The notes beneath the pieces are model-generated. The model was not told the origin of the DNA. It worked only from the letters and a program-made list of their open reading frames with translations, and did not search any database. From Bugula neritina (lineage: Eukaryota; Animalia; Bryozoa): a stretch of DNA of 64,000 bases. The translations under genes and the position numbers were made by a program. The stretch lies in contig OZ037765.1 of NCBI GenBank assembly GCA_964035545.1, positions 31,805,504 to 31,869,503 on the forward strand. Reading direction: 5' to 3'. Shown here one piece after another: positions 4,048-52,100 of the stretch (positions within the stretch are counted from its first letter, which is position 1; each line of letters starts with the position of its first letter).

Positions 4048-7000
4048 GCCTTTGTATTTATTTCCCTTCTTGATTCCGCAAAGATGTCTCTTTCTGCTGC
4101 ACCTTTTGCTCTTAAAGCAGTAGCTGAAGGTTACCATGCCACCCAGCGAGTGAAGGTATACACCTTGATAGCTTTCAATAGAGAATAATAAACCATGTAC
4201 AGTACTTTACTACTTTACAACAATTAAGTGCTTGAAGATTATTTATCTAACAGTATAATTGCTAACTTCTTTGTAAAAATACAAATTCAAAAACCAAATT
4301 ACTGGATTATTCTCAAACATAAATGATCATGCTGTAGTTGATATTAAGGTTTTTGTGTTTGCATAGAAACATTAGAATTTTGAAGATAAGTTGAGGTATA
4401 TGCAATATCGGTGAAGGCAAATTAACAGCCCCTACTTTTAATTCTTTTTAAATAATTATTAATTCTGCAGGAATTGTTAGTTTTGGAAACTCAGCCAATG
4501 GAAATGCATCCTATTATACATTCAGAAAATGTGGTAGAGATAAGAGAAGGATACTTTGGCTGGCAAACATCTGAGGCTTTTGTGAATCCAATGACTAAAC
4601 CAAGTATACATATTATATACACTATATACCTTGTTGGAACGTTGTATGTTTTCCCTCTCCTATATATGAACAACGGATGAATACAATAGTTGAATAATCA
4701 AAAATTTTAATTTGAAGGTTAAAGAACAAAAAGGCTATTTTATACGTAGCTTTATAATTTTATGTCGCCAAAAATAAAAGTTATGCAGAGTAAAAGAGTC
4801 ATGCATATTGGTTACCTTTTTAAAAAAAAACATTCCTCGCTAAAAACAACAAATTTTTTTGATTAAAAAACAATTTTTCACAATTTCTGAATACAGGTGC
4901 ACAAAAACCTAAGGCAAAAAGCTTAACAGTTAACAAATTTTTGACTTTTATTGAAAAAAATACAAGTTCAAAAGATGCGGAGAAGCAGCCACTTAGGGAG
5001 GAAAGCCAGACGGAGCCATCTAAAATTATTACAACTCTACACAATATAAGCATGTTCTTGAAAGAAGGTACTTTAGTTGGTGTCTGCGGAGCTGTAGGAA
5101 GTGGTAAAACTTCACTCATACAGGCTATACTTGGTATGGTACGTACTTATTATTGATTCTTTCCATTTAAATATTTTCAGATTAAAATATCATCAATTGA
5201 AATAGCTACAAGCTAATTTGTAGAGGATCACAGATATAATAGTTGGGTAATAATTTGAAAAGATTTTACAAAGCACTGCAAAATCGTAGTATGCAATTCA
5301 TGGCTTTAAAACAGTAAAAAGAAAATTTACTATAATATCATGATTTAATATTAAAACTAATTGGCAAAAGAAGTTAATGACCAGCAAAGCATCTGATTTA
5401 CATAATTCACTTGCATTCTATAAGTTATAATTTATAAATCGCACCTAGTACGTTTTGTTAGTGTCAGTATGATTCTTATTCACTTTATCATATCAACCTG
5501 AGACTATAATAGGCGAAATATTAAACTTATATTTTATCCAATGAGTCACCACCTGCAAATACCATTTTGTAATTTTTCCTCTTTTTATTAAAATTTTTTT
5601 TCATATGAAATAAATAGCAAAGGCTTATAATATAAATTTCATTCTTTTAATTTGCTATAGATGACAAAAGCAAAAGGTGAAATTGCTGTCAACAAAAAGA
5701 AAAAAATTGCATATGTTGCGCAACAAGCTTGGATCATGAACGCAACTGTGAGAGAAAATATTTTATTTGGAAAAAAGTTCAACAAAGAGTTGTGAGTTGG
5801 AAAATATATTTTTATAAAAACTGAACACAAACTGTAAAATATTTCGTTTGTACACTTTTAATCTACATACAATAATGATCGAAATTTTAGTTTGAGGCAT
5901 GCAGCATAAGTATATTCGAGTTCAAACTGGCGATATTTCTACTAAAAAATAATTTCAGTTAGTCTTCCTTTTTCAAGCTGTCTTTATCTTTCTATTATAG
6001 ATGCTCACATAAAGTTCAAATATCAACTTAAAAATTTTATATCTCACTAAATAGCATAACTTTTTGTTGTTGAAAACCATAAACATATAATTAGAAAATG
6101 AACTCAAAATAAATTCATAACAGTTTTGCACAGTCATCTAGAGTTATAGGCTTGTTGAAAACTGTTTCCCTTCCGTGTAAAAAAATTTTGTTTTATAGTT
6201 GTATATAATTTTTCTTTAAAGCAAGCTCATAATCGTAACAATTATAGACAAGATTGTTGTTTATTAATATTTGATGCTGTTTCAGATACCACCAGGTAGT
6301 GAGTGCTTGTGCTCTACTCAGTGACTTTGATCAGTTACCAGCTGGAGATCAGACTGAGATTGGAGAGAGAGGAATAAATTTATCTGGTGGACAGAAACAG
6401 AGAATAAGCATGGCCAGAGCTGTTTACAGGTAGAATTCTGCAATAATAAATACTTTGGTATATATTGAACCACTACATATTTGTTAGATTTACATAATTG
6501 TTGTACATCATGTTTGCTTTTCACACAGTGACTCTGATATAATACTACTAGATGACCCTCTCTCTGCAGTTGATGCTATGGTTGGACAGCATATCTTTCA
6601 ACATTGTCTGAAAAGACTTCTGGTTAACAAAACAATCCTGTTCGTTTCTCACCAACTTGAGGTAAAAATTATAAAATATAAGCCATTCATCAACATTGGC
6701 TGCCAAGTAAACTATGCTTTACATAAATACAAAATTTCAATTAGTATTGCAACATTGTATTTTAATTTGAATACATTAATATTCCAAAATTAAACTACAA
6801 AACTAGTGGCTGTAAAATCAATTTTATCTTATCTAACATCTTATTTGCTGCTATATAAAGTATTAATATTAGGTTTTCTATAAATAATTTAAAACGCGAG
6901 TTGAATAGAAGCAGACAACTCCTTTAAAGTAAAAAAAAATTATTTTCAGTGTAGATTTATATACTTATTATTGGGAAAGTTTTTAGCAGACTGTGACCAC

Positions 7001-49100: not shown

Positions 49101-52100
49101 TGTGCACTTCATTCCTTAATAAGACTCTCAGACTAAAACCAACATACATTATAACAGTTATCAATGTAGTAATATTATATTTATACTATTTAGATAAAAT
49201 TGAAGCTGGACCTACCACACTGGTAACTCTACATGACATCAACTTGTTCTTGAAAGAAGGTAGTTTAGTTGGTGTCTGTGGAGCTGTAGGAAGTGGTAAA
49301 ACTTCACTCATACAGGCTATGCTCGGTTCGGTATGTATAACACTGTAATATAAAAGCTTCTCTAACAATTTCAAATATATAAATAATATATTTAATTGCT
49401 TTTTAAATTCTTTTGCTAAATATTATATAATCTATAACACAGGCTTTTCCAAATTTTATATTACTAGAGCTATGCTCTGTTTTACAAGACATGCAAAGAT
49501 GTCTTGTAAAACAGAGCATAGCTGTAGGGGTAACGGGGGCACAACGGTCATAGGGGTACAAAAAGCTGGCCAAATTGTGAGAAAACTTATTAACTTAGAG
49601 TTGTGATTTTTTTTTCATAAAAAGATATTGACATAATTATTCAGCTTTTGTAGTTTCAACACTTACGGAACATACGTGTTGAAAAGGTGAGTAAAAAACT
49701 GTTTTTACCTACTTTTTGTAAATTTTTTAGGACGTGGTTAAAGCCTCATAACTTTTTACACTCAAAGGCAAGAAGCCTAGATTTTGCTAATATTGTTGCC
49801 ATTGCTTGTCTCTACAATGCTTAACTAGTATAACAGCAAACACTGAAATAAATTTTCCTTGAGGCACATTTATTCTCAATTTGGCCACACGGGGCACAAT
49901 GGGCCACGCTGACCGGGGCACAATGGGCCACCTGATTATTGCACCCTGATCACTGTTATTAGTTTGTTTGCCTAAAAAGTTGGTTGAACTGCTACTAAAA
50001 TCTATAGATATAGCCATTTCTGACCTTTTTGTAAAATATCAAAGACATCATGGTAAGACTACAAAACTACAAGTTGAAGCTCCCCTAATATATACATCTG
50101 GTGAGGTTAAAGCTTTGCAATTTTATACATAATACAAAACACTCTGCTGTTGCTACTAGTAGATAGTCATGATAATCATTATATATTAAACCATTGAGGG
50201 AATATACATGTATTTGACTGAAATAAATTGTGATTTGCTCATTTGCTTCCCCTCTCCCCTTCGTACTCCAGTCACAAACCTCAGTCATGCATGCACCTTA
50301 GCTACAGTTCATAGAAAAAAGTCTACTCGGGTTTTTGTAGTACACGTTACTAAAGTTTTTTTTTTGGATAAATGTTGCTCTGAAGTGAAAATAACAGAAC
50401 ATTTTTAGTTCTAAACAGTAATGATAATGGCACTGCAGAGCCGAGTGACGTGCGTTTGATTTTGCCTTCCTCTGCTAACCGTAGTAACACAAACTGTACA
50501 GCTAAAACATGAATTTTGCTGTAGATCTGAAAGAGTATCTTTATTTATTTGTAATATTAAATAAATAAAGATCAGATGTAACAAAATATACGCAAAATTT
50601 CAATATATTTGTTGTGTCCCATTGTACCCCGGTACCGGGGCACAATGGGCCGATTTTTTTGTCGTGAACATTTCATTATTCTGAAAGTTGCGAGAGAGAT
50701 AGAAACAACAAACTGATACCTGTAATAGACAACATATGCAGCATTAAGACTAGAGATTATTGAACTAGTAACTTGAAAAACAGACAAATGAGAGCAACAA
50801 ATGCAAAATTCGGCCCGTTGTGCCCCCCCCCCCCGTTACCCCTATAGTAATATAAAATCATTCAACTTGTTCTTTCTTGACAAAAAAGATTAAGTGATAA
50901 ATGTAGTCTAATAAAAGCTATCCTTGTTTTGTAAAATTTTGTATATTTTTTTTCTGTTTTATTAAAAGATAGAGAAAGAAGGAGGAGAAATTGCAATCAA
51001 TGAAAGTAAAGCAGTTGCATACGTACCACAGCAAGCGTGGATCATGAATGCTACTGCAAGAGAGAATATTTTATTTGGGGAACGTTTCAACAGAAAATGG
51101 TAATGTTATTGATAAGGCTTTATTGCTTTTTTGTATCATGCAATTAATTAATGTGGCAATAACTAAATTGTGGTTACAATTTCCTGAACACTTCAGGTAC
51201 AACCAAGTAGTAAGTGCCTGTGCTCTACTCAGTGACTTTGATCAGTTACCAGCTGGAGATCAGACTGAGATTGGAGAGAGAGGAATAAATTTATCTGGTG
51301 GACAGAAACAGAGAATAAGCATGGCCAGAGCTGTTTACAGGTGGATCTTTTTCACAACTTTTTGTATAATCTTACCTCTTTGTGAGCAAACTTTGAACTT
51401 GATAATATTGTTTTATTTTTTATTATTGGACAGTGATTCTGACATAATATTACTAGATGACCCTCTCTCTGCAGTTGATGCTATGGTTGGACAGCATATC
51501 TTTCAACATTGTCTGAAAGGACTTCTGGTTAACAAAACAGTCCTCTTTGTTTCCCATCAACTTCAGGTAAAACAGGGCTAAAAGCAAATTTGAATAATAA
51601 AAACATTATAATACTATGCTAATTGTAGATAATGTTTGTCTCAATCGGAAAAGTCAGCTTGTTTCTTTAGTATTTGGTAAAGTGTGGTTTGATATATAAA
51701 ACAGTAAACTTAGTTTCTAGTGGGATGTGACCACATAACAGTAATGAAAGATGGTAGAATAACTGAAGAAGGAACTCATGAAGAACTGATGAAAGAAGAG
51801 GAAGGAGAATATTCTCGTCTCATTCATACTTTCCATGACTCTGGAAATGGTTAGTTTATTGCTATATCTGCCAGCATTAAAAGATATTATAGGTGGTTGG
51901 TAGAGCTAGTATTTTGTATGACTCTATAAGTTGTATTTAGAAGATTATTTAATAAGCTACAACATAACTTTAATTTAAACTTGCATAAATTTGCTTTAAG
52001 TTATAGTTTAAATTCATTGAAAAAAGTGAAGTGGAATTTTGCTAAAAATAAAAAGTATTTGAAATTTTTAGAAAAGTCAAATTTGGCAAACATCCAAAAA

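What the first reader, a model, noticed from the sequence alone, without database searches (positions are those of the whole stretch)
6308..51340. Constant-motor / variable-pocket transporter system: NBD exons homogenised while TM exons and introns diverge
Seen: 122 nt of exon 13 are identical, including all synonymous sites, in A (6308-6429), B (23976-24097) and D (51219-51340). Exons 14, 15 and 25-29 and the 3' half of exon 20 are similarly near-identical across copies, yet flanking introns often cannot be aligned and TM exons (9, 21, 23, 24) differ at roughly half their residues. Protein-level purifying selection cannot explain synonymous identity. Inference: repeated short-tract gene conversion (possibly RNA-templated) resets the ATPase and coupling modules while substrate-binding helices escape, producing a repertoire of pumps with one shared engine, analogous to constant and variable regions.
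Basis: partly seen in the sequence, partly recalled or inferred. Interest (0 to 1): 0.82.

Follow-up and report, generated by a model that had tools for sequence, protein, structure and literature searches.

The report
Gene conversion homogenises ABC-pump motor exons
A cluster of old, duplicated drug-pump (ABCC5-like) genes keeps its ATP-motor exons nearly identical by repeatedly copying them between gene copies, while the membrane exons and introns have diverged to saturation. This is a clear new example of a known process, not a new one.

Summary
The window holds five ABCC5-like gene copies: A(+), B(-), C(-, internally deleted and decaying), D(+) and E(-). They belong to a nine-copy cluster within a family of at least 35 genes.

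Between old lineages, synonymous difference (pS) is 0.66-0.75 in transmembrane (TM) exons, which is saturation. It is only 0.15-0.20 in nucleotide-binding-domain (NBD) exons 13-15 and 25-29 (Fisher p 1e-30 to 1e-45). The same NBD exons reach pS 0.47-0.88 against paralogues on other chromosomes and 0.21-0.26 between orthologues of a related species. Their silent sites are therefore free to change, and the identity is specific to the cluster.

Contigs built from the raw reads of a DNA run show 3-9 times the single-copy depth on the identical blocks and no differences on the unique parts of A. Polishing is therefore not the cause. Extra identity runs about 30 nt into the flanking introns, exact matches overrun exon ends, and all introns are retained. 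This points to DNA-templated conversion, not RNA-templated.

In a sister cluster, exons 13-14 group by species while the introns and exon 12 group by orthologue.

TM exons are under purifying selection (dN/dS 0.13-0.14 in young pairs). The "variable pocket" is therefore old divergence that conversion no longer reaches, not shown diversifying selection.

Verdict: regional interlocus gene conversion, a new member of a known kind. An earlier first-reader note of this scan described the same pattern just upstream.

Unexplained: short cores in exons 13, 25 and 28 are almost invariant across chromosomes.

The parts
1..13527 (+). Gene copy A (ABCC5-like). Exons 9-29 lie in the window. Exons 1-8 lie upstream of the window start, and window 1-4047 is part of a roughly 5.8-kb intron 8.
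   Evidence: Exon models with AG/GT sites and consistent phases. Exons 7 and 8 found 2.2 and 1.9 kb before the window start, and the 5' exon 6 kb before it. RNA contigs join 5791>6286, 6429>6529 and 8526>8858.
4975..5138 (+). A exon 11 (NBD1 Walker A). Only the 3' half, from about 5060, is homogenised.
   Evidence: Alignment. Exact inter-lineage matches of up to 102 nt. Inter-lineage pS 0.32.
6286..7115 (+). A exons 13 (6286-6429), 14 (6529-6661) and 15 (6980-7115): the homogenised NBD1 block, covering the signature motif, Walker B and the NBD1 end.
   Evidence: pS 0.00-0.23 among A/B/D. TIGR00957 positions 727-863 mapped on copy D. Read-contig depth 3-9 times the single-copy depth.
8339..9031 (+). 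A exons 18 (8339-8526) and 19 (8858-9031): diverged TMD2 exons.
   Evidence: pS 0.56-0.68 and pN 0.32-0.40 against B and D. A single-copy-depth DNA contig spans 7069-9224 with no differences.
9152..9281 (+). A exon 20 (TM8-ICL3 motif). The 3' half is near-identical in A, D, E, G1, G2 and G4.
   Evidence: Aligns to human ABCC5 residues 848-888 of chain 8wi2_A (941-981 in the full-length chains). Summed read-contig depth about 1240 in that bin.
9609..11270 (+). A exons 21-24 (9609-9786, 9942-10046, 10436-10625, 11181-11270): diverged TMD2 exons.
   Evidence: Inter-lineage pS 0.67-0.84, the same as against paralogues on other chromosomes.
11597..13527 (+). A exons 25-29 (11597-11786, 11927-12086, 12761-12981, 13079-13215, 13420-13527): the homogenised NBD2 block.
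   Evidence: pS 0.08-0.30 within the cluster against 0.35-0.88 for outgroup clusters. Star-like tree.
15434..31898 (-). Gene copy B, complete, lying tail-to-tail with A. Homogenised exons: 29-25 at 15434-17186, 15-13 at 22956-24119, and exon 20 at 21368-21497. Diverged TM exons: 18309-20588, 21894-22384 and 25382-27199.
   Evidence: 5' L0-like exon at about 31725-31898.
23976..24119 (-).
35250..40242 (-). Copy C, an internally deleted and decaying copy: a 5' exon at 40054-40242 followed by exons 22-29. The exon 26 acceptor has changed from AG to TG, and the donors after exons 22 and 28 are GC. Its NBD2 exons are still 84-97% identical in protein to the other copies.
44290..57173 (+). Gene copy D, complete. 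Homogenised exons: 13-15 at 51197-51849, exon 20 at 53789-53918, and 25-29 at 55915-57173. It stops 8 codons earlier than the other copies (TAG at 57171-57173).
51197..51340 (+).
59754..64000 (-). Gene copy E, lying tail-to-tail with D. Exons 29-20 are in the window and the rest lies beyond its end. E is D's closest relative in TM exons and introns (an imperfect palindrome, D 53749-57206 against E 63702-59754).
   Evidence: D-E TM pS 0.15.

Best explanation
The window is part of a cluster of nine ABCC5-like ABC-transporter gene copies: seven full genes and two 3' fragments. A further 3' fragment lies 1.6 Mb away. The organism is probably a bugulid bryozoan.

**What is shown.** The gene lineages are old. 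Silent sites in the membrane exons and introns are saturated. Short DNA tracts are repeatedly copied between copies by ectopic (interlocus) gene conversion. The tracts cover the exons for the two ATP-binding domains (3' half of exon 11, exons 13-15, exons 25-29) and the ICL3 motif of exon 20. This keeps silent-site difference in these exons at about 0.15-0.20 for every pair of copies, old or young.

**What is inferred.** Tracts start and end where enough uninterrupted identity exists. Exons under strong protein constraint keep that identity and so stay convertible, which is a self-reinforcing loop. Indel-ridden introns and diverged membrane exons stop the tracts. The tail-to-tail (palindrome-like) and tandem arrangement of the copies probably favours intrachromosomal exchange.

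**Consequence.** The result is a set of pumps with almost one ATPase sequence and different membrane domains. Whether selection actively protects the membrane exons from conversion is not shown.
For: 1. **Silent-site contrast.** TM exons have pS 0.66-0.75 and NBD exons 0.15-0.20 in seven inter-lineage pairs (Fisher p 1e-30 to 1e-45).
2. **Silent sites in NBD exons are free to change.**
   - Against paralogues on C5, C6 and C7: exon 14 is 0.66-0.67 (0.16 within the cluster), exon 27 is 0.55-0.72 (0.14), exon 28 is 0.47-0.59 (0.08) and exon 29 is 0.76-0.88 (0.21).
   - Codon identity at conserved residues in NBD exons is 0.78-0.95 within the cluster and 0.35-0.63 against outgroups (exons 13 and 25 excepted). 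The codon-usage expectation is 0.34-0.42.
   - Orthologue pS to a related species is 0.21-0.26 in exons 12-14.
3. **Trees.** TM exons give deep, well-supported lineages with branches of 0.24-0.45. NBD1 and NBD2 exons collapse to a star with branches of 0.005-0.08 inside the same outgroups.
4. **DNA-level tracts.**
   - Ungapped identity 6-30 nt into introns next to NBD exons is 0.38-0.51, against 0.28-0.37 next to TM exons.
   - Exact matches of 147 and 140 nt span the 137-nt exon 28.
   - The ends of intron 27 are conserved and intron 28 can be aligned in A/C/E.
5. **Distribution of long matches.** Exact inter-lineage matches of 40 nt or more fall almost only in exons 11, 13-15, 20 and 25-29. 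None fall in TM exons 8-10, 18, 19 or 21-24.
6. **Not an assembly artefact.** Contigs of a DNA run cover the unique parts of A at depth 63-98 with no differences. The identical blocks have depth 289-780.
7. **Conversion after speciation in a sister cluster.** Informative sites in exons 13+14 split 4:0 for species against orthologue. Exon 12 and the non-coding flanks split 8:167.
Against: - Topological incongruence is not significant from the NBD side. The AU test does not reject the D+E or G1+G2 clades on NBD exons (p about 0.19-0.20). Conversion after those young duplications is therefore suggested by equal distances only.
- There is no GC3 rise in converted exons, so there is no mark of GC-biased conversion.
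- The species-versus-orthologue test could be run only on a sister cluster and rests on 4 sites. The window's own cluster has only 1.4-2.1-kb contigs from the related species.
- No formal tract-detection program (GENECONV, RDP) was run.
Confidence: 0.85

Rival explanations
1. Adaptive partition. Conversion happens as described, and selection also removes conversions that reach the membrane exons. Each pump thereby keeps its own substrate pocket.
For: The boundaries between homogenised and diverged sequence are sharp, even inside exons 11 and 20. The loop exon 22 and NBD1 exon 12 are moderately conserved in protein (pN 0.14-0.19) yet are not homogenised. Published parallels interpret similar patterns this way (TLR1/TLR6, PMC2077338).
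Against: TM exons of the young pairs show plain purifying selection (dN/dS 0.13-0.14). Long exact matches, which conversion needs, are simply absent from TM exons, so a passive limit is enough to explain the pattern. TM-side exons are sometimes exchanged (exon 19 B~D, exon 7 G2~G4).
Confidence: 0.3
2. Constraint on silent sites. Codon bias, splicing enhancers, RNA structure or small-RNA targets keep the NBD exons alike, without any conversion.
For: The cores of exons 13, 25 and 28 are highly conserved at silent sites even between chromosomes. The exon 13 core evolves somewhat more slowly between orthologues (pS 0.144 against 0.22-0.26). Whole exon 13 has a fold z-score of -1.9.
Against: Most NBD exons are saturated or nearly so against outgroup clusters. 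Different leucine codons are each kept at their own positions, which does not fit selection for optimal codons. The identity spills into introns. Fold z-scores of the cores are -0.25 and -0.28, and there is no Rfam match.
Confidence: 0.04
3. Assembly or polishing artefact. Multi-mapped reads made similar exons look identical.
For: The identical blocks are short and occur in many copies, which is the situation in which polishing can homogenise sequence.
Against: Contigs built directly from the reads of run X1 start and end at the block borders (for example at 6308). They carry 3-9 times the single-copy depth. The single-copy contigs of A agree with the assembly at every base. Polishing also cannot produce the fourfold pS contrast, nor the graded, copy-specific differences seen in exons 14, 15 and 25-29.
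Confidence: 0.02
4. Conversion templated by spliced RNA or cDNA. This would explain why tracts coincide with exons.
For: Identity blocks end within about 5-15 nt of most exon borders, and neighbouring introns such as intron 25 cannot be aligned.
Against: All introns are retained at the same positions and phases. Identity and exact matches continue into introns. Short introns 13 and 27 are partly co-homogenised. A cDNA template spanning two exons would have deleted the intron between them.
Confidence: 0.03
5. The copies are all young, and the membrane exons and introns diverged unusually fast.
For: NBD pS (0.13-0.20) equals the TM pS of the truly young pairs D/E, G1/G2 and B/C.
Against: Silent sites at conserved residues of TM exons are at the codon-usage expectation (0.44-0.50 observed, 0.32-0.40 expected). 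Protein-level selection cannot cause that. A rate difference of about tenfold between exons a few hundred bases apart has no known basis.
Confidence: 0.02

Closest known systems
Regional gene conversion in mammalian TLR1/TLR6 (Kruithof et al. 2007, PMC2077338)
   Same: These are tandem paralogues in which one region is kept alike at the DNA level by repeated, independent conversion, while the ligand-binding part diverges. There, paralogues are more alike than orthologues in the converted region. I saw the same for exon 13 in the sister cluster.
   Different: TLR1/TLR6 is two genes with one continuous region of about 900 nt in a single coding exon. Here there are nine copies, and at least ten separate exon-sized tracts interrupted by introns that cannot be aligned.
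Regional homogenisation of clustered protocadherin variable exons in fugu and zebrafish (Yu et al. 2007, PMC1852091)
   Same: Many clustered paralogues have a homogenised 3' part (silent sites included) and a diverged 5' specificity part, with a discrete boundary. The homogenised sequence differs between subclusters, as it does here between clusters on different chromosomes.
   Different: Protocadherin clusters also have truly shared constant exons joined by splicing, and no exon is shared here. That paper tested for a GC3 signature of biased conversion. I found no GC3 rise.
Mosaic divergence by interlocus gene conversion in tandem HMA4 copies of Arabidopsis halleri (bioRxiv 10.1101/2025.10.29.685298)
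   Same: Effective conversion rates vary within a tandemly duplicated transporter gene with exons and introns, giving a mosaic of homogenised and diverged segments.
   Different: The HMA4 duplicates are recent. Here the lineages are saturated outside the converted exons, so the contrast is far stronger.
Arm-to-arm conversion in palindromes
   Same: [quoted passage not shown]
   Different: Homogenisation here also acts between non-palindromic copies tens of kb apart, and only in conserved exons.
Human ABCC5 (MRP5), solved structures 8wi0 and 8kci
   Same: This is the best match among solved structures for exon 27 (E 1.6e-28) and exon 20 (E 2e-12). Each exon's best NCBIfam match with a full-length profile is TIGR00957 (MRP), at colinear positions.
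   Different: The full-length protein was not scored, because the joined model was not searched. The family has at least 35 members in this genome, against a single ABCC5 in human.

Membership tests
ABCC (MRP-type) full ABC transporter | Two nucleotide-binding domains, each with Walker A, signature and Walker B motifs | tested here: met
   Exons 11-15 map to TIGR00957 positions 652-863 and exons 25-28 to positions 1262-1498. The motifs GAVGSGKT / LSGGQKQR / [11 protein letters not shown] and GRTGSGKS / FSVGERQL / ILVLDEATA are read in all full copies.
ABCC (MRP-type) full ABC transporter | Two membrane domains in the order TMD1-NBD1-TMD2-NBD2 | tested here: met
   Exon 7 maps to positions 483-524, exon 18 to 936-993, exon 20 to 1034-1074 and exon 22 to 1132-1167 of TIGR00957. 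All are colinear with the NBD exons.
ABCC (MRP-type) full ABC transporter | Whole-protein score above the curated cut-off (TIGR00957, 1470 bits) | not tested
Exons were searched one by one by reference.
Interlocus (ectopic) gene conversion / regional concerted evolution | Silent-site divergence differs sharply between segments of the same pair of paralogues | tested here: met
   pS 0.66-0.75 in TM exons against 0.15-0.20 in NBD exons, p 1e-30 to 1e-45.
Interlocus (ectopic) gene conversion / regional concerted evolution | The low-divergence segments are not intrinsically constrained at silent sites | tested here: met
   Outgroup paralogues give pS 0.47-0.88 for exons 14, 15 and 26-29. Orthologue pS is 0.21-0.26. 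Exons 13 and 25 meet this only partly (0.27-0.39 against outgroups).
Interlocus (ectopic) gene conversion / regional concerted evolution | Segments give conflicting trees | tested here: inconclusive
   Tree depth differs five- to tenfold. TM data reject the NBD groupings (p 1e-3 to 3e-7). NBD data do not reject the TM clades D+E and G1+G2 (p 0.19-0.20).
Interlocus (ectopic) gene conversion / regional concerted evolution | In the converted segment, paralogues within a species are closer than orthologues between species | tested here: met
   Tested in the sister cluster at C1:1.75 Mb. Exons 13+14 split 4:0 for species against orthologue, while exon 12 and the flanks split 8:167. Paralogue identity is 0.96-0.98 against orthologue identity of 0.93-0.94. 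This could not be tested in the window's own cluster.
Interlocus (ectopic) gene conversion / regional concerted evolution | Tracts are DNA tracts that can include non-coding flanks | tested here: met
RNA/cDNA-templated conversion | Tracts stop exactly at splice junctions, or introns between converted exons are lost | tested here: not met
   All introns are present with conserved phases. Identity continues into introns.
Constant/variable-region gene systems (immune receptors, protocadherin, UGT1A) | Constant exons are physically shared and joined to alternative variable exons by recombination or splicing | tested here: not met
   Every copy has its own NBD exons with its own splice sites. RNA contigs join exons 12-13-14 and 18-19 of A in cis. 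The resemblance is an analogy of outcome only.

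The most novel reading that the evidence does not exclude
There may be a second, genome-wide layer beyond the local cluster. Cores of 50-100 nt in exon 13 (NBD1 signature motif), exon 25 (before and at Walker A of NBD2) and exon 28 (H-loop) are almost invariant at silent sites in the copies examined, which lie on four chromosomes: 35 copies for exon 13 and ten for exons 25 and 28. Orthologues in a related species differ in the exon 13 core at close to the normal silent rate. 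This would mean either rare inter-chromosomal micro-conversion that keeps a whole dispersed family in step at its catalytic motifs, or an unrecognised function of the nucleotide sequence itself, such as a shared small-RNA target or a splicing signal.
Probability: 0.35. Interest if true: 0.6.

Novelty: new member of a known kind. Interest (0 to 1): 0.45.

Why it matters
**Consequences for analysis.** NBD-based trees are the usual way to classify ABC families. In this lineage they would badly mis-date and mis-group the genes, because NBD exons record the last conversion and not the duplication. Membrane exons and introns carry the true history. Copy-specific primers, RNA-seq quantification and variant calling will also fail on the homogenised exons.

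**Consequences for biology.**
- The cluster is an unusually clean natural case for studying how conversion tracts are limited by local identity. It offers ten exon-sized islands, nine copies, palindromic and tandem partners, and decaying 3' fragments that can act as donors.
- It shows how a large family of xenobiotic-pump-like genes can keep one ATPase sequence while its membrane domains stay different.
- The decaying copies C, G3 and R33 still take part in the homogenised pool. They could therefore pass defects to working genes. From my own knowledge, not checked here, this happens between ABCC6 or CYP21A2 and their pseudogenes in humans.

Tried and rejected
- **Semi-global pairwise alignment of introns.** Too noisy to use as a measure. 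I replaced it with ungapped flank profiles and a multiple alignment.
- **Metagenome scan with exon 27.** No contig of the related species was recovered.
- **Word search with exon 27.** Only two contigs of about 1.4 kb from the related species. These are too short to hold TM exons, so the orthologue-versus-species test could not be run on the window's own cluster.
- **Fetching the full sister-cluster genes.** The test was limited to exons 12-14 and their flanks.
- **AU tests on NBD exons.** Not significant.
- **GC3 as a mark of biased conversion.** No rise.
- **Rfam scan of the window.** No match.
- **RNA folding of exon 13, its core and the exon 25 core.** z-scores of -1.9, -0.25 and -0.28.
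- **Pfam on 5' ORFs.** No hit. The 44085-44510 ORF was instead identified as the shared 5' L0-like exon by its copies upstream of each gene.
- **Whole-genome TIGR00957 search.** Only 6 of 452 candidates were scored, so it gives no copy count.
- **Linker exons 16 and 17.** Too diverged to align and left out of all statistics. One RNA contig places the start of exon 16 of A at 7592.
- **Joined spliced protein.** Never sent to a search tool. Exons were searched singly by reference, so no whole-protein family score, full-length homologue search or structure prediction was made.
- **Not run.** The large representative-protein search and structure prediction were not needed for this question.

Full report
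**1. The observation**

The 122-nt block of exon 13 is identical in A (6308-6429, +), B (23976-24097, on the minus strand) and D (51219-51340, +). The flanking introns lose all similarity within a few bases. A 52-nt probe from the block matches exactly three times and never in 100 shuffles.

A self-comparison of the window shows five copies, not three:
- A (+), running in from upstream of the window
- B (-)
- C (-), partial
- D (+)
- E (-), running out of the window

A/B and D/E lie tail to tail.

**2. What the genes are**

Exon-by-exon scans of copy D against NCBIfam match TIGR00957 (MRP) at colinear positions:

| Exon(s) | TIGR00957 positions |
|---|---|
| 7 | 483-524 |
| 11-15 | 652-863 (NBD1) |
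| 18-22 | 936-1167 (TMD2) |
| 25-28 | 1262-1498 (NBD2) |

The best solved relatives of exons 27 and 20 are human ABCC5 structures. I rebuilt exons 7-15 and 18-29 for every copy. All splice sites are AG/GT with consistent phases, except in C. C has lost the exon 26 acceptor (TG) and has GC donors after exons 22 and 28. Its 5' L0-like exon lies directly upstream of exon 22, so C is an internally deleted, decaying copy.

No whole-protein score was therefore obtained. Concatenations for trees and counts were made only inside scripts, from the stored files.

**3. Silent-site divergence per exon**

Among A, B and D:

| Exons | Synonymous difference (pS) |
|---|---|
| 13 | 0.00-0.10 |
| 14 | 0.03-0.23 |
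| 15 | 0.16-0.21 |
| 25-29 | 0.04-0.31 |
| 9, 10, 18, 21-24 | 0.56-1.03 |

Pooled over exons, seven inter-lineage pairs give TM pS 0.66-0.75 and NBD pS 0.15-0.20 (Fisher p 1e-30 to 1e-45).

Some exons are mixed:
- Only the 3' halves of exons 11 and 20 are homogenised.
- Exons 12 and 19 are shared by B and D/E but not by A.
- Exon 22, which encodes the second long cytoplasmic loop, is not homogenised.

**4. The whole cluster and family**

DNA searches of the window's own genome (216 Mb, 321 contigs) found exon 13 in at least 35 places on contigs C1, C5, C6 and C7. They found NBD2 exons at 88-95% identity only around the window and at one site 1.6 Mb away.

I fetched the neighbourhood and annotated it. 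In order it holds G1(+), G2(-), G3(-, 3' fragment), G4(+), A, B, C, D and E, plus the 3' fragment R33 at 33.4 Mb. By TM exons the lineages are (G1,G2,G3), G4, A, (B,C) and (D,E). An earlier first-reader note of this scan (s1-487324) describes the same mosaic pattern 10.9 kb upstream. That is the G4 region, and my analysis confirms it there.

**5. Is it conversion or constraint?**

The key control is three paralogues on other chromosomes (C5, C6, C7).

| Exon(s) | pS within cluster, between lineages | pS against outgroups |
|---|---|---|
| TM 8-10, 18, 21-24 | 0.67-0.84 | 0.63-0.89 |
| 14 | 0.16 | 0.66-0.67 |
| 15 | 0.22 | 0.47-0.85 |
| 26 | 0.30 | 0.62-0.79 |
| 27 | 0.14 | 0.55-0.72 |
| 28 | 0.08 | 0.47-0.59 |
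| 29 | 0.21 | 0.76-0.88 |

Codon identity at residues that are conserved in protein gives the same answer:
- NBD exons within the cluster: 0.78-0.95
- TM exons within the cluster: 0.44-0.50
- Codon-usage expectation: 0.32-0.42

So silent sites in NBD exons can and do change. They are alike only within the cluster.

Trees agree. TM exons give deep lineages with supported young pairs. NBD1 and NBD2 exons give a star five to ten times shallower relative to the same outgroups. The AU test shows that TM data reject the NBD groupings. NBD data are too uniform to reject the TM clades. The evidence is therefore one of depth, not of resolved conflicting topology.

NBD pS is about the same (0.13-0.20) for young and old pairs. 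This is what a mutation-conversion balance, or one recent round of homogenisation, would give.

**6. Artefact?**

Contigs built from the reads of a DNA run of the same organism cover the unique stretches of A (6592-7039, 7069-9224, 9411-11400) at depth 63-98 with no differences. The shared blocks form separate short contigs at much higher depth:

| Block | Depth |
|---|---|
| 6308-6365 | 780 |
| 6559-6627 | 572 |
| 7030-7092 | 289 |

One such contig begins exactly at 6308, where the copies start to agree. The multi-copy identity is therefore in the reads.

These are contigs, not single long reads, so the strictest test remains open. Three RNA-type runs contain contigs that join 5791>6286, 6429>6529 and 8526>8858. 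This confirms introns 12, 13 and 18, and confirms that A is transcribed.

**7. DNA or RNA template?**

- Ungapped identity next to NBD exons stays at 0.38-0.51 for positions 6-30 of the introns, on both sides. Next to TM exons it is 0.28-0.37.
- Exact matches of 147 and 140 nt cover the 137-nt exon 28, and a 141-nt match covers nearly all of exon 13.
- The two ends of intron 27 are conserved in all copies. Intron 28 aligns in A, C and E. Intron 13 aligns in B and D.
- Every intron is retained.

This is DNA-templated conversion. The RNA idea is not supported.

Exact inter-lineage matches of 40 nt or more occur almost only in exons 11, 13-15, 20 and 25-29, and never in TM exons 8-10, 18, 19 or 21-24. 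This fits tracts that depend on pre-existing identity.

**8. Related species**

A word search with the exon 13 peptide led to JGI metagenome contigs. Their introns are 80-88% identical to particular genes of this genome, so they come from orthologues in a related species. Their record names carry AY690838, the accession of the Bugula neritina mitochondrial genome (PMC2678162). The window's organism is therefore probably a bugulid bryozoan. This is an inference.

For the sister cluster at C1:1.75 Mb, I counted informative sites that group by species against those that group by orthologue:

| Segment | Species : orthologue |
|---|---|
| Upstream of exon 12 | 1:53 |
| Exon 12 | 2:8 |
| Intron 12 | 1:24 |
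| Intron 13 | 1:4 |
| Downstream of exon 14 | 3:78 |
| Exon 13 | 3:0 |
| Exon 14 | 1:0 |

In exon 13, paralogues are 96-98% identical within a species and orthologues 93-94%. It comes out as predicted, but on a sister cluster and on few sites.

Orthologue pS is 0.21-0.26 for exons 12-14. This is at or above the NBD pS between lineages in the window's cluster. Homogenisation is therefore about as recent as the species split, or more recent.

**9. Adaptive design or passive limit?**

TM exons of the young pairs have dN/dS 0.13-0.14. There is no sign of diversifying selection. TM-side exons are sometimes exchanged (exon 19 B~D, exon 7 G2~G4). I therefore take the "variable pocket" to be old divergence that conversion can no longer reach. 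Selection against TM conversions remains possible (about 0.3) but unshown.

The pattern belongs with regional gene conversion in TLR1/TLR6 (PMC2077338), in fish protocadherin clusters (PMC1852091) and in HMA4. My literature searches found no report of it for the NBDs of clustered ABC transporters. That absence covers only the library that was searched.

**10. An unexplained second layer**

The middle of exon 13 is almost invariant in all 35 copies on four chromosomes. Parts of exons 25 and 28 are invariant in the ten copies I could compare.
- Codon identity at conserved residues is 0.82 for exon 13 and 0.76 for exon 25, both against outgroup clusters on other chromosomes. It is about 0.5-0.6 in most other NBD exons.
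- Different leucine codons are each kept at their own positions, so this is not selection for preferred codons.
- Orthologues differ in the exon 13 core at pS 0.144, only mildly below the neighbouring exons. Distant paralogues differ by 0.31 there, against 0.71-0.79 elsewhere.
- A linked pair of variants is shared by non-orthologous copies in both species but is absent from the relevant orthologue.

This hints at rare inter-chromosomal micro-conversion. A function of the nucleotide sequence itself is not excluded. RNA folding and Rfam gave nothing.

Noticed in passing
window 6336-6403 (exon 13 core), 11689-11736 and 11740-11786 (exon 25), 13139-13170 (exon 28); also loci L020-L044: Short cores are almost invariant at silent sites across dispersed family members on four chromosomes: exon 13 in all 35 copies, and exons 25 and 28 in the ten copies compared. 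Orthologues in a related species differ in the exon 13 core at near the normal silent rate. Either inter-chromosomal micro-conversion or a nucleotide-level function could explain this.
   Followed up: partly
window 35250-40242 (-): Copy C is an internally deleted gene: a 5' exon at 40054-40242 is followed directly by exons 22-29. It has a lost exon 26 acceptor (TG at 36264-36265) and GC donors after exons 22 and 28. Its NBD2 exons remain in the homogenised pool, so it could donate defects to working copies. G3 and R33 outside the window are similar 3' fragments with frame breaks.
   Followed up: partly
window 53749-57206 (+) against 63702-59754 (-): D and E form an imperfect palindrome, tail to tail with a spacer of about 2.6 kb. 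[quoted passage not shown] G1/G2 upstream repeat the same arrangement. A/B are also tail to tail but are old lineages.
   Followed up: partly
window 57171-57173: Copy D ends at a TAG 8 codons before the stop used by A, B, C and E, where the others have CAG.
   Followed up: no
   Followed up: no
window 15974-16176, 19778-19962, 25959-26042, 36964-37166, 59383-59504, 61533-61708: A roughly 190-nt interspersed repeat (70-87% identical, both orientations) sits in introns of B, C and E and in the D/E spacer. It looks like a small non-autonomous element.
   Followed up: no
window 14074-14354, 30036-30357, 33820-34024: Long (AG)n microsatellites lie just past the 3' end of A and within the 5' part of B. 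An (AC)n run lies between B and C.
   Followed up: no
loci L045-L050, L131-L133 (JGI samples 3300002729, 3300003318): Host contigs in symbiont metagenomes carry orthologues of several family members with 80-88% intron identity. Their names carry the Bugula neritina mitochondrial accession AY690838, which points to a bugulid bryozoan as the source of the window.
   Followed up: partly
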